Positions 5,321 through 54,151 of a stretch of DNA of 64,000 nucleotides are shown here, one piece after another. The notes under the pieces were generated by a model, which saw nothing but the letters and a program-made list of their open reading frames with translations, was not told where the DNA came from and made no database searches. The translations under genes and the position numbers were made by a program. Numbering within the stretch: the stretch's first letter is position 1; each line of letters opens with the position of its first letter. Source of the stretch: Macrostomum lignano (lineage: Eukaryota). Where the stretch lies: NCBI GenBank assembly GCA_002269645.1, contig NIVC01000046.1, forward strand, positions 1 through 64,000, read 5' to 3'.

Positions 5321-8300
5321 GTGAACGGGTGAAATTAGAACTTCTCTGATTGCAGAGGTCTCACGAGTCTCCTCAGCTGCTCGACCACTCCGCCGATGTC
5401 GCTTCTCAGCTCACAAAGTCGGTCTCGAACCCTCGCCTCCGTGTTGTCGAAGTCGCCGCCGATTCCAGCGTTCTTGAAGTAGAGCGGAGCGTCGGGCATG
5501 AAGAAGTGCGGCATGCACTCATCGGGCGAGCTGCTCGACCTCATGAATCTCAGCCTCATGTCGAGAGACTCCTTGAGCAAAGCGATCAGATTGTGGGGCT
5601 GCCAAGAACACCAACTATATCTGCCAGGCTTCTCCAGCATTGTGAAGAGCAGAGTCTTTGCATGGTAGGTCTTGAGTCCAGGTGTGTCCAGAGTGAGCGG
5701 CAAGTGTCTCTTGAAGATGAACTTGATGAGTGTGAACAGCTGGCCCTGGACTGTGCTCAGCCGTCTCATGATGTCTTTCTCTTGGAAGCTGAAGCTCACT
5801 CTGAGCTCGTTGGTCGAGCTCGGTCTGGTCGCCCGAACGAGGTGAACATAATTTCAGCTTCCATTGAGCAGGTTGGCTGCCTGCAGAGCGCAGTGAGCGG
5901 AGAGTCGCTTTGTGACAAGTGAAGAAGATGGGTATTTCTTAAAACTGGAAATATACCCATGCGCTAATGCGAAATATACACAGCTTTAGTAGTTAAATAT
6001 ATGCTCCTGTGAGGCAGGAGCCTCTGCACCCACTGCGTGTGTCCAGCTTCAGCTTCAGCTGTTCTGGCTTCATCAGGTAGCAGCTCATCACATCTGCTCA
6101 AGCATCCTCAGGATTCAAAACCCAATGGCCCGGTCCAATGATTCCAGTTGGCATCAGAGTTTTCTTACCAATTGAAATTTCAGTTTCAATTCCAATATCA
6201 CTTAAAACTAAAATATTTTCTCTCGACTGCTTTTAACGCTTCAATTAAATTTGCGGCCAGAAGAGGCAGAACATATTTTTTTCAATTAGCTCTTTCCAAA
6301 TGCTCAAGCATCATCAGGACTCAGTGCCCCGCTGCAAGGCACCAATCAGCAGTCAGGGCGGCTTCGGTTCATTTTGTTTGAAATTTCCAAGTGAGAGCAG
6401 CAGCACCTCAGCAGAGCCATCCCGCCTACCGTGGGTCACCCAAGCACCGCTGCACCCACTCTGCTGCAATCGGAGCCTGTGAATTCAAAACCCAATGGCC
6501 CGGCTCAGCCAGTCGGCATCAGAGTTTTCTTTTCAATTTCGCCTGCCGCTTGTTTCAGCACCCAAACCGACATTCGCAGTCACAGAAGCTGCTGGAGGCT
6601 GGGCGCCACACGGTTGCGAATTTAGAAATTGACCAAAGTTAATGGGGATAATAAGTTGCATGCGGATCTCAGCATTCTGATGATGAACCCAGCCTCACTC
6701 ACCTGCTCCCACTGCCACCTGTGCGTGGCCCTCCGTGACCTGCAGCCGAGTGGCGCCTCTGCATGCGGCCTTTCTTCTTTTGCAGCCTCCTTTGAGATGG
6801 AACTGCTGCCCAGCAACCAGCACAGTCCAGTCAATGTCCGAGTCTGCAGCTGTCCTGCCGTTCACTTGCACCAGACTGTTGGCCCAGCCCTCTGCGTAGC
6901 TGCCCGTCATCCGCCTGCCATCCTGTGTGAGGACTCGAGCGACTTCTTCCAGCCAGTCAGCCAGCATCTGCTGACACTTTGCTCTCTGCTCGGTGAATCC
7001 CGCATCGCTGAGCAGTCGATGCAGCTCCTCGCTCAGGCGCCTGCGTTGCTGGTAGTCGCCTGAGAGCCTGGAATGATCCCAGATGCGTGTGGGTGATTTG
7101 CTCAGAATTGGATGGACAGAACAAGCAGGAGAGCTGAGAGTGCTGCTGCTTCAGCACTCAGACTGGCATCTCAAGCAGGAGAGCTGAGAGTGCAGCTGCT
7201 GCAGCACTCAGACTGGCATCTCAAGCAGGAGAGCTGAGAGTGCAGCTGCTGCAGCACTCAGACTGGCATCTCAAGCAGGAGAGCTGAGAGTGCAGCTGCT
7301 GCAGCACTCAGACTGGCATCTCAAGCAGGAGAGCTGAGAGTGCAGCTGCTGCAGCACTCAGACTGGCATCTCAAGCAGGAGAGCTGAGAGTGCAGCTGCT
7401 GCAGCACTCAGACTGGCATCTCAAGCAGGAGAGCTGAGAGTGCAGCTGCTGCAGCACTCAGACTGGCATCTCAAGCAGGAGAGCTGAGATTGCAGCTGCT
7501 GCAGCACTCAGTCCAACCCAATCTGAACCCTCCTGAGATTCGCTGCAATTTCTGTCCCAAGCTGCCAGCCTGTTGGAAGGCGCAATGCGGCAGTGAAAGC
7601 CAAACCGGCCAGGCTCACCGATGGAAGCCCGAATCCAAGCGGTGAGCGGCTGCTTGCCGGGCCTCTGGGCTTCTGCAATGCGTGAAGGAAGCCAGGGTTC
7701 TCACAGCAGTTGCGTTTTAGAATGTATTGCATCACATATTTCTTGATTGAGTTAAAAATTCATCTTTAACTGCAGCTTCATCAACTTCCAACGCTCTTTC
7801 AGGTGGAAGTATCAAAAATCGGAGGGAGGGTACATGTAGGTAAAAGCAGATGACCGAAAGCAGTTGAGAATATTGAAGCGGCTGCTGTCTTCCGTGAGCT
7901 GCACCTGAGCAAACCGGTGCTTGGCTGCTGAGAGACGGAGCAGCTGTGTGATGCGAGCTGGCTGCATTCGAGAGAGGGTGTCGGTGAGAGCAGAGTTCCT
8001 GCCTTCGATGGCCATTGCTGCAGCGAAGCTGAGGATGGTGCTGGATTGGAAGAGCCAGTCAGGCTTGAGGCCGAGAGAGGAAACGACATTTTCGTCAAGG
8101 CGAGAGCAAGCCGCGACTGCGTATTGGAAACGGAGATTCGCTCTCTGATCCGGACTTGATAGACACGAAATGAGGAACTTGACCACTTCCCACTGGCCAT
8201 TTCTTGCAGCAGATTTAGCAGTTTTGTTGCAGCAGTGATCTCTTTTTATTTGGTCAGCGACTGTCGGCACGAGGAACCTGACGACTTCTAGGTGACCATT

Positions 8301-8835
8301 TCTGGCAGCAGATTCAGCAGCATTGATGCAGCAGTCATCTCTTTGTTTGTGTAGCGACTGTCCGCACGAGAAACTTGACGGCTTCTAAGTGACCATTTCT
8401 TGCAGCAGATTCAGCAGCCTCGATGCTGCACTGATCTCTTTTTGCTTGTTTCGCTCTCTCATACGGTCTTGAGCGGCATGAGATGAGGAACTTGTGGACT
8501 TTTAAGGGACTCTTGATTGCAAAATATTTCGCAGCCTCGATCCTGCACTGACCTCTTTTTGTGTGATCAGCGACTGGCTCCTCGAGAAACTTGACGAATT
8601 CTAAATGACCCTCACTGGCAGTAATTTCTGCAGTTTCAATACAGCACTGATTTCTTTTTGTTTGGTCAGTGACTGACTCCACGAGAAACTTGACGACTTC
8701 CAACTGACCCTTTCTTGCAGCAAGTTGTTTGCAAAATATATATCTCTTTTTCTTTTGCTGAAGGTCCAGATGATGTCTGAGTGCCTGGATATTCCCATTT
8801 TTGGCAGCCTCATCAGCACTGATTTGTTGGCGCAT
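5321..8835 (-). pseudogene. ANK-cGLR paralog A (pseudogene)
   Basis: Ankyrin exon 8835-~7930 (2-nt deletion near 8337, 3' end deleted), 54-nt exon 7672-7619, NTase exon 7067-6703 (GSYAEG..SDID). The Mab-21 exon starts at 5880, has a frameshifting replacement, and is truncated by the Polinton at 5320. Confidence 0.88.
7121..7510. repeat. 50-bp intronic VNTR (~8 copies)
   Basis: Unit CAAGCAGGAGAGCTGAGAGTGCAGCTGCTGCAGCACTCAGACTGGCATCT; about 1 copy at 28080 and about 2 copies at 51341. Confidence 0.95.
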
Positions 8836-9026
8836 TTTACTTGGTGCGCTGTGAAGTGCTTTTCACTGGAAGGTAAATATTTTTTGTGTTCGTTTAGTAA
8901 TTGAATTGGTTGAAAGAGGAAGTCAGAAATAGGGGAGAGGGGAAGATGGAAAGAGGGGCGGTTTCTTGGTTTGAAACGTTAAAAACACGTTTTGAAGAGA
9001 GTAAATACCTTAAATTACTGACTGGT

Positions 9027-10195: not shown

Positions 10196-10225
10196 GTGAG
10201 CGGAGCTCTGAGTAGCCCAGAAATG

Positions 10226-22455: not shown

Positions 22456-23888
22456 TCAAGCCGCTGCATCAAGTCTCTCCAGCTTCCGCCTGACCCAGCC
22501 GATCTTCTCCTCGTCCTGCGTCTCCATGGCGACGCGTCTCTCTTCCTCGATCATCTCCATCTGCTGCAGGCTGAGCTCCACGTGCTCGCGGCAGTCGCTG
22601 TAGTGAGCCAGAGTGAGCAGCTCCTCCAAGTCCGGGTCTCCAAGCAGCTGTTCAATCCAATGATCGAATGCGATTGCAGGTGCGCGATTGTGGAGCAGCT
22701 CAGCTTGGAGACTCCAGCTCAGGCAGCGGAAGTTCACGTGCAGGTGGGGCTGCGAGAGAGACTGCGACAGTCTGGCTGTGAACAGAGTCTGCGTGAACTT
22801 GGGAAGGAATGGGAAACGAGGCGGAGAGTCGCATGGGAGGCAGAACCTCCACGCCCAGTCAGAGTCTTCTGGCAGCTTTATCTCACTAAACTGGTATCTA
22901 CCCTTATCTCGAATATCCAATGGCTTCAACCCCGACTCAACCTGATGTCCCCGCAGCTTCATCGTGAGTCTCTCAGCCTCCTTAAAGTCTCTGAACTTCC
23001 AATGCGCCATGGCGGTCATGCACAGGGCGGCGCACTTGCACCACTTCAGCTTACGAAGGAGACTGAGCTGCCTCATCAGGGTGTCTCTGTCGCTCGATTC
23101 CGACTGCAGCTCGCTCACACACTGGTGCACCACACTGTACACGTCTGCGAACTTGTAGTACCTAGCTGGATAGTCACGTCCTTTCCTGATCTTCGTGACA
23201 GCAGGCGGCGCTGTCAGAGGCAGCAGAGTGAACGGGTGAAAGTAGAACTTCTCTGACTGCAGAGGTCTCACGAGACTCCTCAGCTGCTCGACCACTCCGC
23301 CGATGTCGCTTCTCAGCTCACAAAGTCGGTCTCGAACCCTCGCCTTTGTGTTGTCGAAGTCGCCGCCGATTCCAGCATTCTTGAAGTAGAGCGGAGCGTC
23401 TGGCATGAAGAAGTGCGGCATGCACTCATCGGGCGAGCTGCTCGAGTCGATGAAGCTCAGCATCATGTCGAGAGACTCCTTTAGCAGAGCGATCAGATTG
23501 TGGGGCTGCCAAGCCTCAGTTTCAAGATATTTGCCATGCTTCTCCAGCATTGTGAAGAGCAGAGTCTTTGCATGGTAGGTCTTGAGTCCATGTGTGTCCA
23601 GAGTGAGCGGCAAGTGTCTCTTGAAGATGAACTTGATGAGTGTGAACAGCTGGCCCTGGACTGTGCTCAGCTGTCTCATGATGTGTTTCTCTTGGAAGCT
23701 AAAGCTCACTCTGAGCTCGTTGGTCGAGCTCGGTCTGGTCGCCCGAACGAGGTGAACTGGAATATATGTGTCTTCAATCAGTTTTCTAATTCTGTCCTCA
23801 CAGAAACTGCTGCAGCACTCGATCGCATGGCACGTGTCCTGTGCAGGCCGCACACCGCACGCAGTGGCTCTCACTGCAGGTTGGTTGC
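22456..23888 (-). CDS. ANK-cGLR paralog B exon 4: Mab-21/cGAS-like C-lobe plus ~270-aa helical extension
   Basis: Acceptor CCCTGCAG|GC in phase 1. Motifs QDTCHAIEC, ELRVSFSFQEK, LKTYHAKTLLF and CMPHFFMP match Mab-21/cGAS family signatures; open to TGA. Confidence 0.9.
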
Positions 23889-24381
23889 CTGCAGGGCGCA
23901 GTGAGCGGAGAGTCGCTTTGTGGCGAGTGAAAAAGGATGGGTTGGTTTGAATCCAATGAAATATTATTTAAAACAACAATATTTTCTCTCGGCTGCTAGA
24001 TAATTCTGATGATTCGACAGTAAAATTAAATTTACTCTTCTTTCAAACCTAAAAGGCTAAAAGGTAGAAGTTTCCACCTAATTTTCATATTTTTAAGGCA
24101 TGCAATTATGAAAAATATTGAATTGGACTTAAAGACTTGATAAGAAAACTTAAGACAAGCGCTTAGTTTCAAAGCTCTGTCATTCATTCGACCATAATAA
24201 AGATCGCTTAACACCTGTTTAGATAAGTAACTATTCGTACTTTTGTTACCCCCAATGAAAAGAGAAAATACAAATGAGGTGACAAAATCAAACAGTGGAA
24301 CGAAAGAACAATAAGAGCAAACAGCTACGGCAGATGCAATAACAGAACTGTCCGCACCAGTCTCGGTCTCTCACTCAGTGC

Positions 24382-25146
24382 TCACACCAAAGAAGTCCTG
24401 GGCGCGACCTGGTGGGTCACCGGCTGCTGGCGGAGCTGCTCAGAGTTGGGTTGCTGGGTTTCAAACCGCCTGCACAGCCGGTTCACGTGCACCCAGCGAA
24501 TCGGCCGGCTGCCGAAGGCGCGGCGGATGCACACAGAGTGGCCGCGCTGCTCAAGCACTGTCCAGCCCGGCTCCAAATAGGGCGCCAGCTTCGAGCGCCG
24601 CATCTCAATGCTCAGCAGCACCTCGGCGCCTTGGAGAAACTGCAACAGATCTGACGCCTTCTTGTCGTGAGCCGCCTTCTGCTGCTGCCCGGCGGCTACC
24701 AGATTCTCCTTGACGAACTCGCGAATCCGGGCCAGCCGCCACCCCAGTAGTGCCAAGTAGGTGCTGGTGCTGCTCTTCACCTTCGGCGGGAGCGCCGGGT
24801 CGTAGCCGGTCATCACCGTCAGCGGTGCCACCTTGGTTGAGCTGTGGACCCTGGAGTTGTAGGACAGGACCACCAGCGGCAGCTGCTCCTCCCAGCTGGA
24901 ATCGGTATCGGCGAGCAGCCTCAACAGCTGCAGCAGCGACTTGTTGCCGAGCTGCACCAGTCCATTTCCCTGTGGATGGTACGGCGTGGTGCGCGTCTTC
25001 CTGATGCCCAGTGCTCGCAGCGTCTCCTGGAACAGCTCGCTATCCAAGTTCGCGCCCTGGTCCGAGTGGATGATAGATGGGACTTCAAGCAGGGAGAAGA
25101 CCTTCACTGCAGCGTCCGCGATGGTCTTGGCGGTCTGATCTGACAT
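24382..25146 (-). mobile_element. Gypsy integrase fragment in intron 3 of paralog B
   Basis: IIHSDQGANLDS and RTTPYHPQGNGL motifs; no upstream pol or LTRs. Confidence 0.85.
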
Positions 25147-25771
25147 CGGCCCGGCGGTCAGGAACTTGGAGAACTGGTCCTGGTAGCTGTTGCCATTGCA
25201 AGCAAGATTTTCATTTTTAGTAAATTGGAAGTCGTGTCATCAGTTGTGAGGGAGCGCACCTGTTTGCCACTTACGATTTATTTGCCTCGTATTTATACAC
25301 TAGCTGAGTATACACATGCTATTGTACATATGTACATTGTACATATACGTATGTTAGCCTTTAAATCTTTAGCTGGTATTCAATAGATTTTTGGCTGCTT
25401 GATGAGACGCAACAAAATTTTGGCGCCCTCTGAAGAGCCGAATAAATACCTCTGCACCCACCGAGTTTGCCCTCAGCTGCTCTGGCTTAATCAGGTTGTA
25501 GCTGAGCACAGCTGCTCAAGCATCATCAGGACTCAGTGCCCCGCAGCAAGGCACCAATCAGGCAGTCAGGGCGGCTTCGGTTTATTTTGTTTGAAATTTC
25601 CAATTGAGAGCAGCAGCACCTCAGCAGAGCTATGGTGTGGGTCACCCAAATACCGCTGCACCCACTCTGCTGCAATCGGAGCCTGTGAATTCAAAACCCA
25701 ATAGCCCGGCTCAGCCAGTCGGCATCAGAGTTTTCCTTTCAATTTCGCCTGCCGCTGGTTTCATTCGTTCA

Positions 25772-27506: not shown

Positions 27507-27654
27507 ACCCAAACCGACCCAGGTTAAGACAAAGTCACAGAAGCTGCTGGAAGCTGGGCACCACTCGGTTGCGAATTTATATTTGAGCAAAGTTAATGGG
27601 CTTCCAGTTGCATGCGGATCTCAGCATTCTGATGATGAACCCAGCCTCACTCAC

Positions 27655-28025
27655 CTGCTCCCACTGCCACCTGTGCGTGGCCCTCCGTGACCTGCAGCCA
27701 AGTGGCGTTTCGGCAGGATCCAGATCTTCCTTTGCAGCCACCTTCCAGATGAAACTCCTGCCCAGCAACCAGCACAGTCCAGTCAATGTCCGAGTCTGCA
27801 GCTGTCCTGCCGTTCACTTGCACCAGACTGTTGGCCCAGCCCTCTGCGTAGCTGCCCGTCATCTGCCTGCGATCGCCTTCCTGTGTGAGGACTCGAACGA
27901 CTTGTTGCAGCCAGTCAGCCAGTCTCTGCTGACACTCTGCTCTCTGCTCGGTGAATCCCGCATCGCTGAGCAGTCGATGCAGCTCCTCGCTCAGGCGCCT
28001 GTCTTGCTGGGAGTCGTCTGAGAGC
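27655..28025 (-). CDS. ANK-cGLR paralog B exon 3: nucleotidyltransferase active-site exon
   Basis: Acceptor TCATTCCAG|G (phase 2), donor GCAG|GTGAGT (phase 1); MTGSYAEG...DSDIDWTVLV. Confidence 0.9.
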
Positions 28026-28226
28026 CTGGAATGATCCGAGATGCGTGTGGGTGAATTGCTCAGAGTTGGATGGTCAGAACAAGCAGGAGAGCTGAGAGTG
28101 CAGCTGCTGCAGCACTCAGTCCAACCCAATCTTAACCCTGCTGAGTTTCGCTGCAATTTCTGCCCCAAGCTGCCAGCCTGTTAGAAGGCGCAATGCGGCA
28201 GTGAAAGCCGAACCGGTCAGACTCAC

Positions 28227-28280
28227 CGATGGAGGCGCGAATCCAAGCCGTGAGCGGCTTCCTGCCGGGCCTCTGGGGTT
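28227..28280 (-). CDS. ANK-cGLR paralog B exon 2 (54-nt linker)
   Basis: CATTGCAG|...|GTGAGT, frame-preserving; exactly 54 nt in all three paralogs. Confidence 0.65.
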
Positions 28281-33894: not shown

Positions 33895-34103
33895 GAGTGC
33901 CTAATAAGGAGTTTAGTAATTGTTAATAATTAGGCCCTTAGGCGAAATAAGCAGGCGATTCGGCGGCTTCACTATTGAGTAAAATGCAGCAAAGTACGGT
34001 ACACAATTGGCTCAGTTCTCTAATCAAGCAATGGAAATTAAGCAAACCCCGGATAAGCAAAGGCAATTAGAGTACAAATCAGTACACGAACTCACCGGCA
34101 GCT

Positions 34104-34226
<123 letters not shown>

Positions 34227-35404
34227 TGGAGTGAGCGGTTGACTGCAGACAGGCAGGTAGTGAAGTGGCGATGCGCTGAAGCGACGAGACGCTGATGAAG
34301 CTCAGGTGATGCTGAGCATGCTGGACCGCGGGCCGGCATAGGTTCGTCTTATAGACGAAACGAGTCCAAAGGTAGGACCGAAGGTACAAGCCCTAGGCGT
34401 TAGCCGTAGCAAAGGCCAAAGGCAACCATCCGAAGGAAGGAAAGAAAGACTTCTAGAGGTTCTCACGCCGTAGATCACTTCTTTAAACAGTCCTCACGGC
34501 GGCCGCTCGAAGCTCGTTTCCAAGACTCCCTCTCTCTGATTAGCTGCCGGGAAAATGGCGTCAATTAGTCATGATGAGAAGTATGAGAACGGCATAGCAA
34601 CATGAGAAATGGGAGAATTGCGCAATTTGGAGGAGGGGTGGGGGAAAATGAGCACAGCGGGGAGCCGAAGAAGTGTTGCGTAAGCAAATAAGAACAAAAG
34701 GATCCAGAACGAGAACAAAGGAAATGGAAAACGGGGATAATTGGGGAGAACCGAGAACAATAGCAGAGCAAAAATCGAGAGAGGGGTGCCAATTGGGTGC
34801 GAAAACGAGAACAAAAGAACGAGAAACTCTGAAAAATGTGATAATTATGTGCACAAAGGAGAACAAAAAATAGTAAAAGAGAACAATAGAGGCGGAGGAG
34901 GGGTGGGTGTCGCATGAGAAATCTTGATAAGAGAACAATAGCATGAGAAAAGGTTGCGCAAGAGGAGGGTGATGATCGAGTCATCGGGGTGAGGGAGGGG
35001 TCAGGAGCCTTGCGTCACCATTTGGGATTCTAAAAGGAGATGGGGTGACGAGGAGCACAAACAATACTCTAAGTAGGCACGGGATGAAGAAGGGACAGCG
35101 CAAGAAAACCGTGCTATAACGTTGACAAAAAGATGGGAAACATGAGAAGCACATGATGCATGGGGTGTGGCGCATGAGAAAAGGGGGGCAGGCGAGATGC
35201 ACAAAAAGGGGGCCCCGGAAGGGCAAGTGTGACTGATTGGAAGACGGAACAGGGACAGCAAGGGAACGCTACAGAGCGGGAGTCATTGCGCCTGGTCAGG
35301 GACCCGGTCCAGTCTCGACAGCTCTGCCCAGTGGGTCAAAGGGGATCGGGGACATTTCGAAAAATCTCCTGACATGACCCCGCGATCAAAACGTGGTTAC
35401 ATCA

Positions 35405-35930
35405 ACTTGATGAACCAAGGATTACTGCACTTGATGAACCAAAGATTATTGCACTTTATGAACCAAGGATTATTGCACTTGATGAACCAAGGATTCTTGC
35501 ACTTGATGAACCAAGGATTCTTGCACTTGATGAACCAAGGATTCTTGCACTTGATGAACCAAGGATTATTGCACTTGATGAACCAAGGATTACTGCACTT
35601 GATAAACAAAGGATTACTGTACACTTGATAAACCAAGGATTATAACACTTGGCAAACCAAGGATTACTGCACTTGATAAACCAAGGATTATTGCTCATAA
35701 TAAGCCAAGGATTATTGCACTTAGCAAACCAAGGATTACTGCACTTGATAAACTAATGATTTTTGCTTGATAAACCAAGGGTTACTGCACTTGATAAGCC
35801 AAGGTTTAATGCACTTAATAAACCAAGGATTATTGCACTTAATGAACCAAGGATTACTGCACTTGATAAACTAATGATTATTGTACTTGATAAACCAAGG
35901 ATTACTGCACTTGATGAACTAAGGATTATT
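35405..35930. repeat. 24-bp minisatellite (target of LTR Y2)
   Basis: AACCAAGGATTATTGCACTTGATG, about 20 copies; one more partial unit lies left of Y2 at ~28658-28675. Confidence 0.95.
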
Positions 35931-36650
35931 GCTAAGGATCTTGCCATCTTGGGGTATGCTATCTGGGGGATACTTGGGATTGTATTTTGGGGTTCTTGCT
36001 ATTGTTTGGGGGGTGCTTGCTGTTGTAATTGGGCGTATGCTTTGTATCTTGGGGGGGGGGGTAGGATGCTTGCTGTCTGGGTTGCTCTCTATCTTGGGGT
36101 ACTTGCTATCTGGGAAGGGGTGCATGCTACCGGAGGATGCTTGCTATTTAGGGGGATGCTTGCGGTCTGAGTTATAGATTCTATTAGGACAAATGCGTGT
36201 TGTCTTTGTGAAGGCTTTTTTGTTGTATTTTTTTCGTATTTTTGTTACTTTCACAAAATAGAGATTCTTAGCAAACATCTTTGTCCGTGACAATTTTACT
36301 CGAACAAGGTGATTTATAAAACAGAAGAAGGAATTGGTTCTTTGATTGCTTATTGTGCGCCCCGTAAGGGGGCACTAGATTTATAGTGCTTAGCTTAAAA
36401 AATAATATCATAAAAAGATGTTCGCGAAATTCCCGCCTCACTCAATGTTCGAGTTGTACTTTAGTTTTCACGTTGTTTCACTGTCACTTTCTCTCTCTCT
36501 CCCTCCCGTGACTGGTCATTCTTGCGCGCTATCGTTTTACCCCTAACAGTTTGTACATTTGCGCTTGCCAGTGAGCATGGTTCTGTTCAATCGTAGTCTT
36601 CTTCGCTTGCAAACATGACCTGGCTCAGTTTTGCCTAGACCAACACTCAC

Positions 36651-39600
36651 CCCGCTCCAATGGGATCCAGCAGCCGCAGCACCTGCCGCCGCTCGAATCG
36701 CTCTGCCACCTGCGCACACGTCAGACCCTGACCGTCTCGATGACTCGCATCCGCTCCTCTGTCCATCAGAGCCTTGGCTGCTCGCACGTGACCGGCTTCG
36801 CACGCTCGTGACAGAGCAGTCCGACCCTGACTGTCTTCAGCACGCACTGACGCACCGAGATCGATGAGTTTCTCAATGAGCTCGTGATGACCTGCATCAG
36901 CTGCCAGCATGAGAGCAGTGGCTCCAGTGCTGTCTGGCAGATCGACATGCTGTGTGCTGACTCGCTCATCATTGATCAGTGTGACAGCAAGAGCGACGTG
37001 TCTTTGAGAGATGGAGAGACGGAGCAGCTGTGTGATGTGAGCTGGCTGCATTCGAGAGAATGTTTTTTTGAGAACAGAGTTCCTGCCTTCGATGGCCATT
37101 GCTGCGGTGAAGTTGAGGATGGTGCTGGATTGGAAGAGCCAGTCGGGCTCGAGGCCGAGGGAGGCAACGACATCTTCGTGAAGACGAGAGCAAGCCATGA
37201 CTGCGCAATGGATACGCAGATTCGCTCTCTGATCCGGACTTGAGAGGCACGAGATGAGAAAATCAACCGCTTCTCCTTGATTCTTTTCTGTAGCATATTT
37301 GGCAGCCTGGATGCAGTACTGATTTCTTTTTCTTTGGTCAGCGACTGTCAGCACAAGAAACTTGACGACTTCCCAATGATAATTGTCAGCAGCAGATTCA
37401 GCAGCCTCGATGCAGCACTGATCTCTTCTAGTTTGGTCAGCGACTGTCGCCACGAGAAACTTGACGACTTCCCACTGACCACTGATTACAGCTATTCTCG
37501 CAGCCTTGATGCAGCACTGATCTCTTTTTGTTTGGTCAGCGACTGTCGGCACGAGAAACTTGACGACTTTCCACTGATAATTGTCAGCAGCAGATTTGAC
37601 AGCCTTGATGCAGCACTGATCTCTTTTTGTTTGGTCAACGACTGTCGGCACGAGAAACTTGACGACTTTCCACTGATAATTGTCAGCAGCAGATTTGACA
37701 GCCTTGATGCAGCACTGATCTCTTTTTGTTTGGTCAACGACTGTCGGCACGAGAAACTTGACGACTTCCCACTGATCATTGTATGCAGCAGATTCTGCAG
37801 CCTTGATGCAGCACTGATCTCTTCTTGTTTGATCAGCGACTGTCGGCACAAAAAACTTGACCACTTCTAAGTGACCATTTCTTGCAGCAGATTTGGCAGC
37901 CTTGATGCAGCACTGATCTCTTTTTGTTTGGTCTGCGACTGTCAGCACAAGAAACTTGACGACTTCTAAGTGACCTTTTCTTGCAGCAGATTTAGCAGCC
38001 TTGATGCAGCACTGATCTTTTTTTGTTTGGTCAGCGACTGTCGGCACGAGAAACTTGACGACTTCTAAGTGACCATTTATTGCAGCAGATGTGGCAGCCT
38101 CGATGCAGCAATCATATCTTTTTGTTTGGACAGCGACTTCAGGCACGAGAAACTTGACGACTTCTAACTGACCATTTCTTGCAGCAGATGTGGCAGCTCT
38201 GATGCAGCACTGATCTCTTTTTGTCTGGTCAGCGACTGTCGGCACGAGAAACTTGACGACTTCTATCTTACCTTTGTGTGCAGCACATTTAGCTGCCTCG
38301 ATGCAGCAATCATATCTTTTTTTTTGGTCCGCGACTTTAGACACGAGAAACTTGACGACGTCCCACTGATAATTGTCAGCAGCAGATGTGGCAGCCTGGA
38401 TGTAGCACTGATCTCTTATTGTTTGCTCAGCGACTTTAGGCACGAGAAACTTGACGACTTCCCACTGATCATTGTCAGCAGCAGATTCAGCAGCCTCGAT
38501 GCAGCACTGATCTCTTTTTATTTGGTCAGCGACTTCAGGCACGAGAAACTTGACGACTTCCCACTGACCACTGATTACAGCTATTTTTGCAGCCTTGATG
38601 CAGCACTGATCTCTTATTGTTTGCTCAGCGACTTTAGGCACGAGAAACTTGACGACGTCCCACTGATAATTGTCAGCAGCAGATGTGGCAGCCTCGATGC
38701 AGCACTGATCTCTTCTTGTTTCGTCAGCGACTGTCGCCACGAGAAACTTGACCACTTCTAACTGACCATTGTATGCAGCAGATGTGGCAGCCTTGATGCA
38801 GCACTGATCTCTTCTTGTTTGGTCAGCGGCTGTCGACACGAGAAACTTGACCACTTCTAACTGACCATTGTATGCAGCAGATGTGGCAGCCTCGATGCAG
38901 CACTGATCTCTTCTTGTTTGGTCAGCGGCTGTCGACACGAGAAACTTGACCACTTCTAACTGACCATTGTATGCAGCAGATGTGGCAGCCTCGATGCAGC
39001 ACTGATCTCTTCTTGTTTGGTCAGCGACTGTCGACACGAGAAACTTGACCACTTCTAACTGACCATTGTATGCAGCAGATGTGGCAGCCTCGATGCAGCA
39101 CTGATCTCTTTTAGTTTGGTCAACGACTGTTGGCACGAGAAACTTGACGACTTCCCACTGATAATTTTCAGCAGCAGATGTGGCAGCCTCAATGCAGCAC
39201 TGATCTCTTTTTGTTTGGTCAGCGACTGTCGGCACGAGAAACTTGACCACTTCTAACTGACCATTGTATGCAGCAGATTTAGCAGCCTTGATGCAGCACT
39301 GATCTCTTCTTGTTTGGTCAGCGACTGTCGGCACGAGAAACTTGACGACTTCCCACTGGTAATTGTCAGCAGCAGATTCAGCAGCCTCGATGCAGCACTG
39401 ATCTCTTCTTATCTTGTCAGCGACTGTCGCTACAAGAAACTTGACGACTTCCCAATGATCATTGTATGCAGCAGATTTTGCAGCCTCGATGCAGCAATCA
39501 TCTTTTTTTGTTTGGTCAGCGACTGTCGGTACGAGAAACTTGACCACTTCTAACTGACCATTGTATGCAGCAGATTTGGCAGCCTTGATGCAGCACTGAT

Positions 39601-39994
39601 CTCTTCTTGTTTGGTCAGCGACTGTCGGCACGAGAAACTTGACCACTTCTAACTGACCATTGTATGCAGCAGATGTGGCAGCCTCGATGCAGCAATCATA
39701 TCTTTTTGTTTTGTCAGCGACTTTAGACACGAGAAACTTGATGACTTCCCACTGATCATTGTATGCAGCAGATTCTGCAGCCTCGATGCAGCACTGATCT
39801 CTTCTTGTTGGGTCAGCGACTTTAGAGACGAGAAACTTGACTACTTTTAACTGACCCTTTCTTGCGGCAAGTTTAGAATACCTTTTGCAAAAAAGATATT
39901 TTCTGTTTGTCTCTCTCTGAAGGTCCAGATGATGTTGGAGTGCCTGGATATTTCCTGTCTTGGCGGCCTCATCGGATCTGATCTGTTGGCTCAT
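36651..39994 (-). CDS. ANK-cGLR paralog B exon 1: ~27 atypical ankyrin repeats, constant region, 3 canonical ankyrins
   Basis: 33-aa repeats such as DQCCIEAATSAAYNGQLEVVKFLVPTVADQTRR; C-terminal GATALMLAADAGH and GRTALSRACEAGH. The ORF stop lies inside donor GG|GTGAGT (phase 2). Confidence 0.92.
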
Positions 39995-44055: not shown

Positions 44056-44334
44056 TTTCACCTTGTTGGCTAGCCTTACCCATTTTTATGATTTCTGCTC
44101 GCACCTGCCAAGTCCAATGGGGTCTCAAAGGTCGAGAGGATTTCAGAGTTTCGAGCTCAGCCAATCAGAGTCGAGCTGGTCATCCCGGGCTCGACCAATC
44201 AGAAAACCCGGAGCTTGATGCAACAAACACGCTGCTGGAATCCCCAGCCTTTAGTCGTTTAGACCGCCAAGGCTTCACCTGGTCGACATGCCGACACCGT
44301 CTGGGTTTGCCACAGCTGAGTGGCATCTCACGAG

Positions 44335-44410
44335 AGCAGAGTCTGCGTGAACTCGGGAAGGAATGAGAAGCGAGGCGGAGAGTCGCAGGAGAGGCGGAAC
44401 CTCCACGCCC
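44335..44410 (-). pseudogene. Relic of a further cGLR last exon
   Basis: Matches the AWRFCLPCDSPPRFPFLPEFTQTL-coding segment at ~22785-22855 and ~49222-49295. Confidence 0.7.
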
Positions 44411-48832: not shown

Positions 48833-50319
48833 TCAGTCTGACTCAGCCTTCCTTTTCCGACCTCGATTTTGCGGCTCGTCTTTGAGGACTAAGGCTGCTA
48901 AGGCTGCTGCTTCAAGTCTTTCCAGCTTCTGCCAGACCCAGCCGATCTTCTCCTCGTCTTGCGTCTCCATGGCGACGCGTCTCTCTTTCTCGATCATCTC
49001 CATCTGCTGCAGGCTGAGCTCAACGTGCTCGCGGAAGTCGCTGTAGTGAGCCAGAGTGAGCAGCTCCTCCAAGTCCGGGTCTTATTCCAGCTCTCGCTTC
49101 CAATCCTCCAGTTTAATTGCAGGTGCGCGATTGCGGAGCAGCTCAGCTTGGAGACTCCAGCTCAGGCAGCGGAAGTTCACGTACAGGTGGGAGGAGAGAG
49201 GCTGCGACAGTCTGGCTGTGAACAGAGTCTGCGTGAACTCGGGAAGGAATGGGAAGCGAGGCGGAGAGTCGCAGGGGAGGCAGAACCTCCACGCCCAGTC
49301 TGAGTCTTCTGGCAGTTTAGAATGGCTATATTGATTTGCTTGAATATCATCTGGCTTCAACCCTGTCTCAACCTGATGTCTCTGCAGCTCCATCGTGAGT
49401 CTCTTAGCCTCCTCAGATTCTCCGAACTTCAAATGCGCCATGGCGGTCATGCACAGGGCGGCGCACTTGCACCACTTCAGCTCATGCAGGAGACTGAGCT
49501 GCCTCATCAGGGTGTCTCTGTCGCTCGATTCCGACTTCAGCTCGCCCACACACTGGTGCACCACACTGTACACGTATTCGAACCGGAATTTCTCTAGTAT
49601 ATAGTATCTACTGTCCCTTATCTCCGTGACAGCAGGCGGCGCTGTCAGAGGCAGCAGAGTGAACGGGTGAAAGTAGAACTTCTCTGACTGCAGAGGTCTC
49701 ACGAGACTCCTCAGCTGCTCGACCACTCCGCCGATGTCGCTTCTCAGCTCACAAAGTCGGTCTCGAACCCTCGCCTTCGTGTTGTCGAAGTCGCCGCCGA
49801 TTCCAGCGTTCTTGAAGTAGAGCGGAGCGTCGGGCATGAAGAAGTGCGGCATGCACTCATCGGGCGAGCTGCTTGAGTCGATGAAGCTCAGCATCATGTC
49901 GAGAGACTCCTTGAGCAGAGCGATCAGATTGTGGGGCTTCCAAGTCTCAGTTTCAGGATCTGTGCCATGCTTCTCCAGCATTGTGAAGAGCAGAGTCTTT
50001 GCATGGTAGGTCTTGAGTCCATGTGTGTCCAGAGTGAGCGGCAAGTGTCTCTTGAAGATGAACTTGATGAGTGTGAACAGCTGGCCTTGGACTGTGCTCA
50101 GCCGTCTCATGATCCGTTTCTCTTGGAAGCTGAAGCTCACTCTGAGCTCGTTGGTCGAGCTCGGTCTGGTCGCCCGAACGAGGTGAACTGGAATATATGT
50201 GTCTTCAATCAGTTTTCTAATTCTGTCCTCACAGAAGCTGCTGCAGCACTCGATCGCATGGCACGTGTCCTGTGCAGGCCGCACACCGCACGCCGTGGCT
50301 GTCACTGCAGGTTGGTTGC
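48833..50319 (-). CDS. ANK-cGLR paralog C exon 4 (Mab-21 C-lobe); premature in-frame TAA at 49082-49084
   Basis: Acceptor CTCTGCAG|GC in phase 1; same motifs as paralog B. The frame continues after the TAA as DPDLEELL... to 48833. Confidence 0.88.
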
Positions 50320-50925
50320 CTGCAGAGCGCGGTGAGCGGAGAGTCGCTTTGTGGCGAGTGAAAAAGATGGGTTGGTTTGAAACTTGCTAAATTTAAATTT
50401 TAAAATTCTCTTAAGAGCCAAATAGCTCGTAAATGCACCTGTGAGGCATGAGCCTCTGCACCCACTGAGTTCGCCCAGATTCAGCTTCAGCTGCTCTGGC
50501 TTCATCAGGCTGCAGCTGAGCACAGCTGCTCAAGCATCATCAGGACTCAGTGCCCCGCAGAAAGGCACCAATCAGCAGTCAGGGCGGCTTCGGTTCATTT
50601 TGTTTGAAATTTCCAAGTGAGAGCAGCAGCACCTCAGCAGAGCCATGCCGCCTACCGTGGGTCACCCAAGCACCGCTGCACCCACTCTGCTGCAATCGGA
50701 GCCTGTGAATTCAAAACCCAATGGCCCGGCTCAGCCAGATGACATCAGAGTTTTCTTTTCAATTTCGCCTGCCGCTTATTTCAGCACCCAAGCCGACATT
50801 CGCAGTCACAGAAGCTGCTGGAGGCTGGGCGCCACTCGGTTGGGAATTTAAAATTGAGCAAAGTTAATGGGCTTTCAGTTGCATGCAAATCTCAGCATTC
50901 TGATGATGAACCCAGCCTCACTCAC

Positions 50926-51287
50926 CTGCTCCCACTGCCACCTGTGCGTGGCCCTCCGTGACCTGCAGCCGAGTAGCGCCTCTGCAAAGAAAAGATTCTG
51001 TGCAGATACCTTCCAGATGGAACTTTTGCCCATCAACCAGCACAGTCCAGTCAATGTCCGAGTCTGCAGCTGTCCTGCCGTTCACTTGCACCAGACTGTT
51101 GGCCCAGCCCTCGGCGTAGCTGCCCGTCATCTGCCTGCCATCCTGCGTGAGGACTCGAGTGACTCCTTCCAGCCAGTCAGCCAGTCTCTGCTGACACTTT
51201 GCTCTCTGCTCAGTGAATCCCGCATCGCTGAGCAGTCGATGCAGCTCCTCGCTCAGGCGCCTGTCTTGCTGGGAGTCGTCTGACAGC
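50926..51287 (-). CDS. ANK-cGLR paralog C exon 3 (NTase active site)
   Basis: TCATTCCAG|G ... GCAG|GTGAGT, 362 nt, GSYAEG..DSDID. Confidence 0.9.
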
Positions 51288-51560
51288 CTGGAATGATTTG
51301 AGATGCATGTGGGTGATTTGCTCAGAGTTGGATGGACAGAACAAGCAGGAGAGCTGAGAGTGCAGCTGCTGCAGCACTCAGACTGGCACCTCAAGCAGGA
51401 GAGCTGAGAGTGCAGCTGCTGCAGCACTCAGACTGGCATCTCAAGCAGGAGAGCTCAGCCCAATCTCAAATCTGCTGAGTTTCGCTGCAATTTCTGCCCC
51501 AAGCTGCCAGCCTGTTGGAAGGCGCAATGCGGCAGGTAAAGCCGAACCGGTCAGACTCAC

Positions 51561-51614
51561 CCATGAAGGCCCGAATCCAAATGGTGAGCGGCTGCCTGCC
51601 AGACCTCCAGATTT
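51561..51614 (-). CDS. ANK-cGLR paralog C exon 2 (54-nt linker)
   Basis: CATTGCAG| ... GG|GTGAGT, frame-preserving. Confidence 0.65.
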
Positions 51615-51884
51615 CTGCAATGCGGGGAAGGAAGTCTGCGGTCTACTGTCAGCTGCATTTGTGCGCAGGCAGTGGCTGATTGACTTTTTTTATGTTGCAA
51701 TTCGCCATTTTTGACCGTGCCTTGCCTTAGAAATCCGCCTAGTTCTTCTTTCTTGTGTTCGCCACATAGTAATATACTGAAAATACGATCGGTGCGCCAC
51801 TTTGCTACATTTTTAGTACAGAAATGCTTAACTAAAAATGAAAATATACTGAAGAGATGTTTGCGAAATTCTCGCCTCACTCAC

Positions 51885-54151
51885 CGCGCTTCACTGAATT
51901 CCAGCAGTCGTTGCACCTGCCGCTGCTCAAATTGCTGTGCCACCTGCGCACACGTCAGACCCCGACCGTCTCGATGACGCGCATACGCTCCTCTGTCCAT
52001 CAGAGCCTTGACTGCTCGCAGGTGACCGGCTTCGCACGCTCGTGACAGAGCAGTCCGACCCTGACTGTCTTCAGCACGCACTGACGCACCGAGATCGATG
52101 AGTTTCTCAATGAGCTCGTGATGACCTGCATCAGCTGCCAGCATGAGAGCAGTGGCTCCAGTGCTGTCTGGCAGATCGACATGATCTGTGCTGACTCGCT
52201 CATCATTGATCAGTGTGACAGCAATGGTGACAGCAAGAGCAATGTGTCTTTGAGAGATGGAGAGACGGAGCAGCTGTGTGATGCGAGCTGGCTGCATTCG
52301 AGAGAGGGTGTCGGTGAGAACAGAGTTCCTGCCTTCGATGGCCATTGCTGCAGTGAAGCTGAGAACGGTGCTGGATTGGAAGAGCCAGTCGGGCTCGAGG
52401 CCGAGGGAGGCAACGACATCTTCGCGAAGACGAGAGCAAGCCGGGACTGCGCATTGGAAACGGAGCTGCGCTTTTTGATCCGGACTTGAGAGACACAAGA
52501 TAAATAATTTGACGGCTTCCCACTGACCCTCGCTTGCAGCAGTTTTGGCAGCCTCGATGCAGCACTGATCTCTTTTTGTCAGGTCAGCGACTATCGGCAC
52601 GAGAAACTTGACGACTTTTAAGCGACCATTGATTGCAGCAGGTTTAGCAGCCTTGATGCAGCAATCATCTCTTTTTTTTTGGTCAGCGACTGTCGTCACG
52701 AGAAACTTGACGACTTTTAAGCGACCATTTCTTGCAGCAGATTTGGCTGCCTTGATGCAGCACTGATCTCTTTTTGTCTCGTCAGCGACTGTCGCCTCCA
52801 GAAACTTGACGATTTCCCACTGACCATTGCTTGCAGCAGATTCAGCAGCCTCGATGCAGTAGTGATCTCTTCTATTTGGGTCAGCGACTTTCGGCAGGAA
52901 AAACTTGACGACTTCTAACTGACCATTTCTTGCAGCAGATTTGGCTGCCTTGATGCAGCACTGATCTCTTTTTGTCTTGTCAGCGACTGTCGCCTCCAGA
53001 AACTTGACGATTTCCCACTGACCATTGCTTGCAGCAGATTCAGCAGCCTCGATGCAGCACTGATCTCTTTTTGTTTTGTTAGCGATTGTCGGCACGAGAA
53101 ACTTGACGACTTTTAACTGACCATTGCTTGCAGCAGATTTGGCTGCCTCGATGCAGCACTGATCTCTTTTTGTTTTGTTAGCGACTGTCGGCACGAGAAA
53201 CTTGACGATTTCCCACTGACCATTGCTTGCAGCAGATTCAGCAGCCTCGATGCAGTAGTGATCTCTTCTATTTGGGTCAGCGACTTTCGGCAGGAAAAAC
53301 TTGACGACTTCTAACTGACCATTTCTTGCAGCAGATTTGGCTGCCTTGATGCAGCACTGATCTCTTTTTGTCTCGTCAGCGACTGTCGCCTCCAGAAACT
53401 TGACGATTTCCCACTGACCATTGCTTGCAGCAGATTCAGCAGCCTCGATGCAGCACTGATCTCTTTTTGTTTTGTTAGCGATTGTCGGCACGAGAAACTT
53501 GACGACTTTTAACTGACCATTGCTTGCAGCAGATTTGGCTGCCTCGATGCAGCACTGATCTCTTTTTGTTTTGTTAGCGACTGTCGGCACGAGAAACTTG
53601 ACGATTTCCCACTGACCATTGCTTGCAGCAGATTCAGCAGCCTCGATGCAGTAGTGATCTCTTCTATTTGGGTCAGCGACTTTCGGCAGGAAAAACTTGA
53701 CGACTTCTAACTGACCATTTCTTGCAGCAGATTTGGCTGCCTTGATGCAGCACTGATCTCTTTTTGTCTTGTCAGCGACTGTCGCCTCCAGAAACTTGAC
53801 GATTTCCCACTGACCATTGCTTGCAGCAGATTCAGCAGCCTCGATGCAGTAGTGATCTCTTCTATTTGGGTCAGCGACTTTCGGCAGGAAAAACTTGACG
53901 ACTTTTAAGCGACCATTTCTTGCAGCAGATTTAGCAGCCTCGATGCAGCACTGATCTCTTTTTGTTTTGTTAGCGACTGTCGGCACGAGAAACTGGACGA
54001 CTTCTAAGTGACCCTCGCTCGCAGCAAGTGTTAAAGCGGGTTTGCAAAAAAGATATATTTTGTTCCTTCCTCGTAGAAGGTTCAGATGATGTTTGAGTGC
54101 TTCGATGTTTCCTGTGCTGGCAGCCTCCTCAGCACTGATTTGTTCGTTCAT
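51885..54151 (-). CDS. ANK-cGLR paralog C exon 1: ~16 atypical ankyrin repeats, constant region, canonical ankyrins
   Basis: 33-aa repeats; the ORF stop lies inside donor CG|GTGAGT (phase 2). Confidence 0.92.

What the first reader, a model, noticed from the sequence alone, without database searches (positions are those of the whole stretch)
5321..54151. Tandem birth-and-death cluster of ANK-cGLR genes
Three co-oriented paralogs share exon structure and even intron sequence. A is a pseudogene, B is intact, C has a truncated tail, and a fourth relic lies at 44335-44410. Ankyrin repeat number differs (about 6, 27 and 16). Rapid duplication, decay and variable repeats are typical of immune receptor clusters such as NLR and VLR loci, suggesting an expanded cGLR-based recognition repertoire in this lineage.
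Basis: partly seen in the sequence, partly recalled or inferred. Interest (0 to 1): 0.85.

Follow-up and report, generated by a model that had tools for sequence, protein, structure and literature searches.

The report
Flatworm ankyrin–cGLR gene cluster
This stretch of a Macrostomum flatworm genome holds a tandem cluster of genes that fuse a long, variable ankyrin-repeat array to a cGAS-like enzyme; one copy is intact, one recently truncated, one dead and one a 77-bp remnant. The family was already listed as cGAS-like receptors in 2023, but its ligand and activity are still unknown.

Summary
Three co-oriented minus-strand paralogs share four coding exons, GT-AG junctions and 90-96% identical intron sequence. 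B is intact (1733 aa, 27 ANK-type units). C (1306 aa, 16 units) has an in-frame TAA that removes about 70 conserved residues. A (6 units) is a pseudogene with a frameshift, two deletions and two stops. A 77-bp exon-4 relic lies at 44334-44410.

The non-ANK part is a cGAS/Mab21-fold protein. It meets the published cGLR criteria: complete MTGS–X20–DIDW–X57–D active-site motif, homology over both lobes (hhalign E 9e-32 to bona fide Mab-21 proteins), and AlphaFold/Foldseek hits to cGAS, MB21D2 and a coral cGLR.

All close relatives are Macrostomum lignano (at least 92 clusters at 50% identity). Li et al. 2023 already catalogued this family as cGLRs and cloned five members, but named no flatworm enzyme among their active ones.

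A collinear public contig carries one extra gene copy, and its C counterpart has an independent nonsense mutation, so birth-and-death turnover is real. Immune function is inferred, not shown. The cGLR core is under weak purifying selection, while the C-terminal domain evolves near neutrality with three hypervariable patches. Verdict: new member of a known kind, moderately interesting.

The parts
22456..39994 (-). Gene B, intact ANK-cGLR, 1733 aa. Exons: 39994-36651 (ANK), 28280-28227 (54-nt mini-exon), 28025-27655 (NTase N-lobe with GS and DxD), 23888-22456 (third Asp, Mab-21_C helical lobe, C-terminal domain, TGA stop).
   Evidence: Spliced ORF with GT-AG junctions and matching phases. The junction peptides match public M. 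lignano models. Pfam finds ANK and Mab-21_C.
37292..39856 (-). B ANK array: 99-bp tandem units; 27 units of 33 aa counted at protein level.
   Evidence: TRF finds 25.9 copies at 87% matches. Regex count gives 27 units with exact 33-aa spacing. Ank_2 E 5e-91.
29681..33631 (+). Ty3/gypsy-type retrotransposon pol ORF (protease, RT, RNase H, integrase), inserted antisense in B intron 1.
   Evidence: Pfam RVT_1, RT_RNaseH, rve, Integrase_H2C2 and gag-asp_proteas. The segment is absent from A and C.
24382..25146 (-). Integrase fragment inside B intron 3. This insertion is absent from C.
   Evidence: Pfam rve E 3.4e-6. Collinearity gap between B and C.
49082..54151 (-). Gene C, 1306 aa. Exons: 54151-51885, 51614-51561, 51287-50926, 50319-49082. 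It ends at a premature in-frame TAA (49082-49084).
   Evidence: B and the public counterpart have GGA at this codon, and the paralog P0008 has Glu.
48833..49081 (-). Former 3' end of the C coding region, still an open frame (about 82 codons) after the TAA. The 59 codons that align with B's tail are 92% identical to it.
   Evidence: dN/dS 0.29 over 59 codons, so the nonsense mutation is recent. The next stop is at 48833-48835.
52509..54026 (-). C ANK array: 16 units, with a recent 4-unit (396-bp) block duplication.
   Evidence: TRF period 99 (15.3 copies) and period 198. Self-match 52502-53630 vs 52899-54026 at 93.7%. Unit listing.
5317..8835 (-). Copy A, pseudogene. It has an exon-1 remnant (6 ANK units, frameshift, stop at 8337-8335, 3' ~375 bp and donor missing), an intact mini-exon (7672-7619), an intact NTase exon (7067-6703), and an exon-4 remnant (5880-5317) with a ~98-bp deletion, TGA at 5856-5854 and TAA at 5337-5335. 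Homology ends at 5317-5321.
7122..7511 (-). 50-bp tandem repeat in the intron just 5' of the NTase exon. It is expanded to 7.8 copies in A, against 2.3 copies in C (51342-51455) and about 1 in B.
   Evidence: TRF and alignment A1.
44334..44410 (-). Relic: a 77-bp fragment of exon 4 (region 'WAWRFCLPCDSPPRFPFLP') lying between C and B.
   Evidence: blastn 90.9% identity, E 5e-26, and tblastn 77% over 26 aa. The relic is present at 99% identity in both intergenic blocks of the public contig.

Best explanation
The window holds part of a tandem, co-oriented array of Macrostomum-specific ANK-cGLR genes.

Each gene has four coding exons. They encode, in order:
- an N-terminal solenoid of near-identical 33-aa ankyrin-type units plus about 3 canonical ANK repeats;
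- an 18-aa linker from a mini-exon;
- a cGAS/Mab21-fold nucleotidyltransferase with a complete GS / DxD / D active site;
- a ~260-aa helical, TPR-like C-terminal domain with three hypervariable patches.

Shown here: the array turns over at two scales by unequal recombination. Whole gene units are gained, truncated, inactivated and deleted (B intact, C newly truncated, A dead, a 77-bp relic, and one extra copy in a collinear public contig). The 99-bp ANK units also expand and contract (6, 16 and 27 units, with a 4-unit block duplication in C).

Inferred: the proteins act like other cGLRs. A ligand bound by the variable ANK and/or C-terminal surfaces would switch on the NTase core, which would make a nucleotide second messenger for a downstream receptor. 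The family would then be a diversified recognition repertoire. The core is mildly acidic (pI about 6.3), so the ligand is more likely a protein or other non-nucleic-acid molecule than dsDNA or dsRNA.
For: Structure of the locus.

cGLR identity:
- Pfam Mab-21_C.
- The family profile hits only cGAS, cGLR1 and MAB21L1 among PDB sequences.
- The AF2 model (pLDDT 79.7, pTM 0.84) gives Foldseek top hits that are all cGAS, MAB21L1, MB21D2 or Sp-cGLR1, at E 2.5e-5 and weaker.
- The exhaustive profile search reaches bona fide PF03281+PF20266 proteins at E 1e-12 to 1e-15.
- hhalign probability 99.9%, E 8.8e-32 over 289 columns, aligning GS57-58, D79/D81 and D141 with the canonical residues.
- These residues are invariant in 14/14 family sequences, or 13/14 for D141.

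Literature: Li et al. 2023 give the cGLR criteria and cloned five M. lignano family members. One of them, PAA68676.1, is my hit P0008, which is 81-85% identical to B and C.

Turnover:
- The public contig NIVC01001976.1 is collinear at 94-97% identity but has an extra copy and a duplicated intergenic block.
- The C counterpart there has an independent TAT>TAA nonsense mutation.
- Other public loci also hold adjacent paralogs and fragments.

Variability:
- The most variable position of the ANK unit (entropy 2.48 bits) corresponds, by my own alignment to the ANK consensus, to a canonical target-contact position.
- Exon 4 has three hypervariable patches.
- dN/dS is 0.25-0.44 for the core and 0.6-1.04 for the C-terminal domain.
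- pI values are.
Against: - There is no activity, ligand or expression evidence.
- Li et al. tested five family members (cGLR domain only, with dsDNA or poly I:C). The active enzymes they name come only from insects, anemones, molluscs, hydras and corals.
- A STING homolog in Macrostomum could not be found, but the search only reached deuterostomes, so this is uninformative.
- The residues flanking the third Asp are Q-D-T rather than hydrophobic.
- Pfam's NTase-lobe model PF03281 does not hit the window proteins directly.
- dN/dS near 1 in the C-terminal domain fits relaxed constraint as well as diversifying selection. The variable patches are partly shared between paralogs (for example 'KLEDWKRELE' in C and P0008), which points to gene conversion rather than point-mutation-driven selection.
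- The extra copy in the public contig could be an assembly error or a homeologous rather than allelic difference.
Confidence: 0.6

Rival explanations
1. The genes are real, enzymatically competent cGLR-family members, but they serve a non-immune, fast-evolving process. Candidates are reproduction, germline or sexual conflict (for which Macrostomum is a model), or transposon control. The turnover would reflect that process rather than pathogen recognition.
For: Tandem turnover, pseudogenes and dN/dS near 1 are generic features of fast-evolving multigene families. No immune link was tested. The acidic core (pI 6.3) argues against classical nucleic-acid PAMP sensing.
Against: Every functionally characterised catalytically complete cGLR acts in innate immunity (Li et al. 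2023). One annotated family member is joined to a caspase domain, which would fit death or immune signalling, but that model is unverified.
Confidence: 0.2
2. The proteins keep the cGAS fold but are catalytically silent scaffolds or adaptors, as proposed for MAB21L1/2, and work through ANK-mediated protein binding only.
For: No flatworm enzyme is among the actives described by Li et al. although five were cloned. PF03281 does not hit. The flanks of the third Asp are atypical.
Against: G57, S58, D79 and D81 are invariant and D141 is present in 13/14 sequences, across paralogs as little as 29% identical. That conservation is hard to explain without catalysis. The core is under purifying selection (dN/dS 0.25-0.44). 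The screen omitted the ANK and possibly the true ligand.
Confidence: 0.15
3. The copies are assembly duplications or collapsed haplotypes or homeologs of a single gene in a polyploid genome.
For: M. lignano has a recently duplicated, repeat-rich genome. The window and the public contig differ in copy number.
Against: The copies differ by 4-9% in introns and have different ANK unit numbers, different transposon insertions, different lesions and unrelated flanks beyond about 40 bp 5' of the ATG and the stop codon. An independent assembly shows the same gene order, the same relic and the same intergenic satellites. Other loci also hold tandem paralogs.
Confidence: 0.03

Closest known systems
Macrostomum lignano cGLRs catalogued and cloned by Li et al. 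2023 (PAA68676.1 / Mlig016402g1, PAA93208.1, PAA86972.1, PAA45980.1, PAA57558.1)
   Same: Same family and subfamily. PAA68676.1 (P0008) is 81% identical to B and 85% to C over the non-ANK part. It has the same GS / DIDW / D motif, the same C-terminal domain and the same ANK N-terminus in the full-length protein.
   Different: They are different paralogs at different loci. Li et al. expressed only the cGLR domain and reported no activity, ligand, genomic organisation or ANK-array variation for them.
ANK- and TPR-fused cGLRs of corals and bivalves (e.g. Stylophora pistillata ANK-cGLRs; Crassostrea/Mizuhopecten cGLR radiations)
   Same: Both have a cGLR core fused to repeat-type interaction modules and show a lineage-specific radiation of tens to hundreds of genes. 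The nearest non-Macrostomum relatives found by the profile search are 600-750-aa Mab-21 proteins with a helical or TPR-type tail, which look like that mollusc type (hhalign E 8.8e-32).
   Different: Here the ANK module is a very long array (up to 27 units) of near-identical, atypical units ('CCIEAA' in place of 'TPLHLAA') that changes in length between neighbouring paralogs. Sequence identity to those proteins is only about 20%.
Vertebrate cGAS
   Same: Same bilobed NTase fold (Foldseek E 2.5e-5, TM about 0.55 normalised to the target), same catalytic triad, and the 'LVP..H…WRxSFS' strand and 'YH.KT' helix motifs.
   Different: There is no Zn-thumb insertion and no basic N-terminus. The core is acidic (pI 6.3 vs above 8.5 for nucleic-acid sensors), and ANK and C-terminal domains are added.
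MAB21L1/MAB21L2
   Same: Same superfamily and Mab-21_C domain.
   Different: MAB21L proteins are single-domain, slowly evolving developmental factors. Li et al. say most flatworms have only these. The window genes are multi-domain and fast-evolving, with a conserved catalytic triad.
NLR / VLR-type immune receptor clusters (analogy only)
   Same: Tandem birth-and-death dynamics, pseudogenes and relics, repeat-number variation in a solenoid domain, and copy-number differences between genomes.
   Different: There is no homology, no evidence of somatic assembly, and no demonstrated immune role or positive selection.

Membership tests
cGLR (criteria of Li et al. 2023) | Active-site motif h[QT]GS X8-20 [DE]h[DE]h X50-90 h[DE]h | tested here: met
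   The motif is M-T-G-S, X20, D-I-D-W, X57, Q-D-T. hhalign places GS57-58, D79/D81 and D141 on the canonical residues. They are invariant in 14/14, or 13/14 for D141. Caveat: the positions flanking the third Asp are Q and T, not hydrophobic.
cGLR (criteria of Li et al. 2023) | [quoted passage not shown] | tested here: met
   hhalign to 16 bona fide Mab-21 (PF03281+PF20266) proteins gives probability 99.9%, E 8.8e-32, covering query residues 9-319. A direct Pfam scan hits only Mab-21_C (26 bits against a cut-off of 24.1).
cGLR (criteria of Li et al. 2023) | Predicted structural homology to cGAS/CD-NTases | tested here: met
   AF2 pLDDT 79.7 and pTM 0.84. The top 50 Foldseek PDB hits are all cGAS, MAB21L1, MB21D2 or Sp-cGLR1, with 68 hits at E<=1e-3.
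cGLR (functional definition) | Ligand-dependent synthesis of a nucleotide second messenger | not testable with these tools
   Li et al. cloned five family members, but the active enzymes they describe include no flatworm protein.
cGLR-STING pathway | A STING-type (or other) receptor for the product encoded in the same genome | tested here: inconclusive
   A search with the human STING CBD returned only deuterostome STINGs among 252 word-sharing candidates. The sensitivity was too low to judge a flatworm.
Ankyrin-repeat proteins | Tandem 33-aa helix-turn-helix repeats matching ANK profiles | tested here: met
   Ank_2 E 5e-91 (B) and 3e-73 (C). Spacing is exactly 33 aa. The units are atypical ('CCIEAA' for 'TPLHLAA'), and about 3 canonical repeats follow the array.
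Birth-and-death multigene cluster | Tandem paralogs with intact, decaying and relic members, and copy-number differences between genomes | tested here: met
   Caveat: the comparison contig may be a homeolog or another strain rather than an allele.
Immune receptor repertoire (NLR/VLR-like) | Diversifying selection on the recognition surface | tested here: inconclusive
   dN/dS is 0.6-1.04 in the C-terminal domain and 1.09 in the post-array part of exon 1, against 0.25-0.44 in the core. There are hypervariable ANK positions and patches. No site-model test was done and gene conversion is evident.
Immune receptor repertoire (NLR/VLR-like) | Expression or function in infection | not testable with these tools

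The most novel reading that the evidence does not exclude
Macrostomum has built a germline-encoded repertoire of dozens of 'natural DARPin-library' receptors. Near-identical ANK units with a few hypervariable contact positions would be shuffled in number and order by unequal crossing-over. These arrays would recognise protein (non-nucleic-acid) ligands and switch on a fused cGLR enzyme, in a phylum otherwise thought to have lost cGLR immunity. That would be a new ligand class and a new activation mode for cGLRs.
Probability: 0.2. Interest if true: 0.8.

Novelty: new member of a known kind. Interest (0 to 1): 0.5.

Why it matters
cGLRs are a recently recognised major family of animal pattern-recognition receptors, and the ligands of most of them are unknown. 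Flatworms were reported to lack them almost entirely.

This locus shows that the exception, Macrostomum, has a large ANK-fused family and is actively making and losing copies, and that it varies the length of the ANK solenoid between neighbouring genes. That pattern points to the ANK array (left out of the only biochemical test so far) and the hypervariable C-terminal patches as candidate ligand-sensing parts.

It also gives concrete constructs to test in an animal where RNAi and transgenesis work: B intact, C naturally truncated. If the proteins are active, the family could reveal non-nucleic-acid activation of cGLRs.

Tried and rejected
1. 'Third catalytic Asp replaced by His169 (VHLVRA)'. 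This was my own by-eye alignment. It was rejected by alignment to canonical Mab-21 proteins and by hhalign. VHLVRATRP is the 'LVPxxH…WRxSFS' strand, and the third acid is D141.

2. Three-exon gene model. It was replaced by a four-exon model after public gene models revealed a conserved 54-nt mini-exon. The skip isoform stays in frame and is not excluded.

3. Single-sequence searches. Pfam found no NTase-lobe hit and PDB phmmer found no relevant hit. Profiles were needed.

4. First dN/dS run. It was wrong after C's stop because MAFFT dropped the '*'. Redone.

5. First comparison with the public contig. It used a wrong offset because two loci were in one file. Redone.

6. STING search. It only reached deuterostomes, so it is uninformative for Macrostomum.

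7. C-terminal domain fold. The AF2 model is good (pLDDT 82.9) but has no significant PDB match (best E 0.42, weak TPR/solenoid-like hits only).

8. ANK-cGLR-ANK-caspase architecture of P0043. The link runs through separate exons and cannot be verified without RNA data.

9. Literature searches for Macrostomum plus cGAS, STING or Mab-21. They found nothing specific beyond the Li et al. supplement.

10. Assembly-artefact or haplotype explanation. Rejected on divergence, distinct lesions and insertions, and an independent collinear assembly.

Full report
**Observation.** A self-comparison of the window shows three collinear copies on the same strand: A (5321-8876), B (22460-40033) and C (48903-54190). 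They are 78-94% identical, and the similarity runs through introns as well as exons (alignment A1). Intron divergence is K2P 0.065-0.093 between B and C and 0.041 between A and C. All genes are on the minus strand.

**Gene models.** C is compact and gave clean GT-AG junctions with matching phases. I first built a three-exon model. Comparison with public gene models then showed an additional 18-aa segment between the ANK exon and the NTase exon. It corresponds to a 54-nt block flanked by ttgcag| and |gtgag that is conserved in all three copies: A 7672-7619, B 28280-28227, C 51614-51561.
- B: exons 39994-36651, 28280-28227, 28025-27655 and 23888-22456, giving 1733 aa.
- C: exons 54151-51885, 51614-51561, 51287-50926 and 50319-49082, giving 1306 aa.
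- B's introns 1 and 3 are inflated by transposon insertions. These include an uninterrupted Ty3/gypsy-type pol ORF at 29681-33631 (+) and an integrase fragment at 24382-25146.

**State of the copies.**
- B is intact.
- C has an in-frame TAA at 49082-49084 where B and the public counterpart have GGA. The frame stays open for about 82 more codons, to the next stop at 48833-48835. The 59 codons that align with B's tail are 92% identical to it with dN/dS 0.29, so the stop is recent.
- A is dead. It has a frameshift in exon 1 (stop at 8337-8335) and has lost the last ~375 bp of exon 1 with its donor. The mini-exon and NTase exon are intact. Exon 4 has a ~98-bp deletion, a TGA at 5856-5854 and a TAC>TAA change at 5337-5335. 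Homology ends at 5317-5321, next to transposon- or virus-like ORFs. The missing 3' part could lie beyond the window.
- The relic at 44334-44410 is a 77-bp piece of exon 4, 90.9% identical to B, in the same orientation (E 5e-26).

**ANK arrays.** The 33-aa units number 27 (B), 16 (C) and 6 (A), with exact 33-residue spacing. TRF sees 99-bp arrays of 25.9, 15.3 and 2.7 copies. C has a recent 4-unit block duplication. The units are atypical ANK repeats ('CCIEAA' where the consensus has 'TPLHLAA') but score strongly with Pfam (Ank_2 E 5e-91). About three canonical ANK repeats follow the array. Variation between units is concentrated at a few positions (entropy 2.48 bits at unit position 4, then positions 21, 33, 16 and 30). 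By my own alignment to the ANK consensus, position 4 corresponds to one of the canonical target-contact positions on the first helix. That mapping rests on general knowledge of ANK and DARPin structure, not on a test here.

**What the non-ANK part is.** A direct Pfam scan hits only Mab-21_C, just above its cut-off (26 bits against 24.1), and a single-sequence PDB search finds nothing. Profile and structure methods are clear:
- A family profile hits only cGAS, a coral cGLR and MAB21L1 among PDB sequences.
- The AlphaFold model (pLDDT 79.7, pTM 0.84) gives Foldseek hits that are exclusively cGAS, MAB21L1, MB21D2 and Sp-cGLR1 (E from 2.5e-5, TM about 0.55 normalised to the target).
- An exhaustive profile search of 1.8 billion representatives finds 702 proteins at E<=1e-3. 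Its second tier consists of bona fide Mab-21 proteins carrying PF03281 and PF20266.
- hhalign between the two groups gives probability 99.9% and E 8.8e-32 over 289 columns covering both lobes.

**Catalytic residues.** I had first thought by eye that the third catalytic acid was replaced by an invariant His ('VHLVRA'). That was a misalignment. hhalign places G57-S58, D79-I-D81 and D141 ('RPAQDTCHAIECC') on the canonical GS, DxD and third Asp. 'VHLVRATRP…ELRVSFSF' is the counterpart of cGAS 'FYLVPKH…WRLSFS'. These residues are invariant in 14/14 family sequences (13/14 for D141), down to 29% identity. The motif MTGS-X20-DIDW-X57-QDT satisfies the active-site criterion of Li et al. 2023, and their two other criteria (homology over both lobes, predicted structural homology) are also met.

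**Family and literature.** All close relatives are Macrostomum lignano: 36 clusters at 90% identity in the first search and 92 representatives at E<=1e-30 in the exhaustive one, with every protein I looked up being M. lignano. The best matches are 86-97% identical, so the window's own genes are not in the public protein set. [quoted passage not shown] Their table of 140 cloned cGLRs contains five M. lignano proteins. One is PAA68676.1 (my P0008, 81-85% identical to B and C) and another is near-identical to P0012. All were expressed as the cGLR domain only. The active enzymes they describe come from insects, anemones, molluscs, hydras and corals. The family is therefore already catalogued as cGLR, while its activity, its ligand and its genomic organisation have not been described.

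**Turnover.**
- The public contig NIVC01001976.1 (126655-171723) is collinear with window 61231-38959 at 94-97% identity. Between the counterparts of C and B it has one more gene copy and a second copy of the intergenic block.
- The relic is present in both blocks at 99% identity, so it predates that duplication.
- The public counterpart of C has its own nonsense mutation (TAT>TAA at 'DSRY*ILEKF'). At the site of the window C's stop it has the B-like version of the third variable patch. So the C lineage is truncated independently in two genomes, and patches are exchanged between paralogs.
- Two other public loci also show adjacent paralogs of different ages and fragments.
- I cannot tell whether the public contig is an allele, a homeolog or another strain.

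**Selection.** Nei-Gojobori estimates give dN/dS 0.44 for the cGLR core between B and C (0.25-0.42 for the exon-4 part among B, C and the two public copies). The C-terminal domain gives 0.6-1.04, and the post-array part of exon 1 gives 1.09. Divergence in exon 4 is concentrated in three short patches (Bc 354-369, 444-464, 526-537) that also vary across the whole subfamily. This shows a constrained core with fast-changing periphery. It does not prove positive selection, and gene conversion is evident.

**Other properties.** The cGLR core is mildly acidic (pI 6.3) and the ANK exon is basic (pI 8.3). Li et al. associate nucleic-acid sensing with pI above 8.5. The ~260-aa C-terminal domain models well (pLDDT 82.9) but has no significant structural match, only weak TPR/solenoid-like hits (best E 0.42).

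**Mechanism.** Shown: a tandem array of catalytically complete cGLR-fold genes fused to variable ANK arrays, evolving by unequal recombination at the gene level and the repeat level. Inferred: ligand binding to the ANK and/or C-terminal surfaces activates synthesis of a nucleotide messenger. The ligand is probably not a nucleic acid, given the acidic core. The downstream receptor is unknown, and my STING search reached only deuterostomes. One annotated relative joins the module to a caspase domain, but that model is unverified.

**Rivals.** The alternatives are a non-immune fast-evolving role, a catalytically silent scaffold, and an assembly artefact. The last is largely excluded by the divergence, distinct lesions and insertions of the copies, and by an independent collinear assembly.

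**Verdict.** The cGLR family assignment is already in the literature, so this is a new member (and a new locus-level description) of a known kind. Interest is moderate. The notable points are the scale of the expansion in a phylum otherwise lacking cGLRs, the exceptionally regular and length-variable ANK arrays, and the naturally occurring intact and truncated pair, which could be used to test what activates these enzymes.

Noticed in passing
window 1524-2582: An ORF with a parvovirus-VP1-type phospholipase A2-like domain (PF08398, E 7.5e-14; 2007-2582 +) overlaps, on the opposite strand, an rve integrase ORF (1524-2219 -). This is a transposon or endogenous viral fragment lying just beyond the point where copy A's homology ends.
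   Followed up: partly
window 29681-33631 (+) and 14082-17750 (-): There is an uninterrupted 1316-aa Ty3/gypsy-type pol ORF (protease, RT, RNase H, integrase) inside B intron 1, which may be a young insertion. A second, decayed gag/RT/integrase element lies between A and B.
   Followed up: partly
window 21104-21886 vs 28849-29336 and 33902-34177: An inverted duplicate of a ~780-bp segment flanks gene B's 3' end and lies in its intron 1. The intronic copy is split by the retrotransposon insertion.
   Followed up: no
window 7122-7511, 51342-51455, ~28100: A 50-bp tandem repeat lies directly 5' of the NTase exon acceptor. It varies from about 1 copy (B) to 2.3 (C) and 7.8 (A), and the same repeat is expanded in public locus L001.
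   Followed up: partly
window ~40025, ~54182, ~8866 (minus strand, about 30 bp 5' of each ATG): All three copies share a 'TACCTTCCAG' acceptor-like motif, and similarity between copies ends just upstream of it. It may be a spliced-leader trans-splice site or a 5'UTR acceptor.
   Followed up: no
B protein, non-ANK residues H92, C97, H116, C148, C149: A set of His and Cys residues is invariant or nearly invariant across the whole family in the NTase lobe. It may form a structural metal site that differs from the cGAS Zn-thumb.
   Followed up: no
locus L003 (NIVC01000031.1), protein P0043: An annotated 2111-aa family member reads ANK, cGLR-like, ANK, then caspase (Peptidase_C14, E 2.8e-27). The parts are joined through separate exons, so it could be a real fusion or two merged genes.
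   Followed up: partly
window 9911-10297 (+), 55273-55725 (-), 60382-61167 (+): Neighbouring ORFs carry an RRM domain, an Ets domain and a 7TM receptor-like domain. They are ordinary flanking genes or exons. The right-hand flank is collinear with the public contig at 95-97% identity.
   Followed up: partly
window 43032-43689, 47154-48399, 11743-13249, 58130-58857, 13250-13396 and 46127-46443: The intergenic DNA is dense with minisatellites: 41-bp x16, 37-bp x34, and two related 12-bp arrays. The same 23-bp unit occurs at two distant sites.
   Followed up: no
window 63225-63532 vs 63693-64000: A 308-bp inverted repeat at 98% identity lies at the right end of the window.
   Followed up: no
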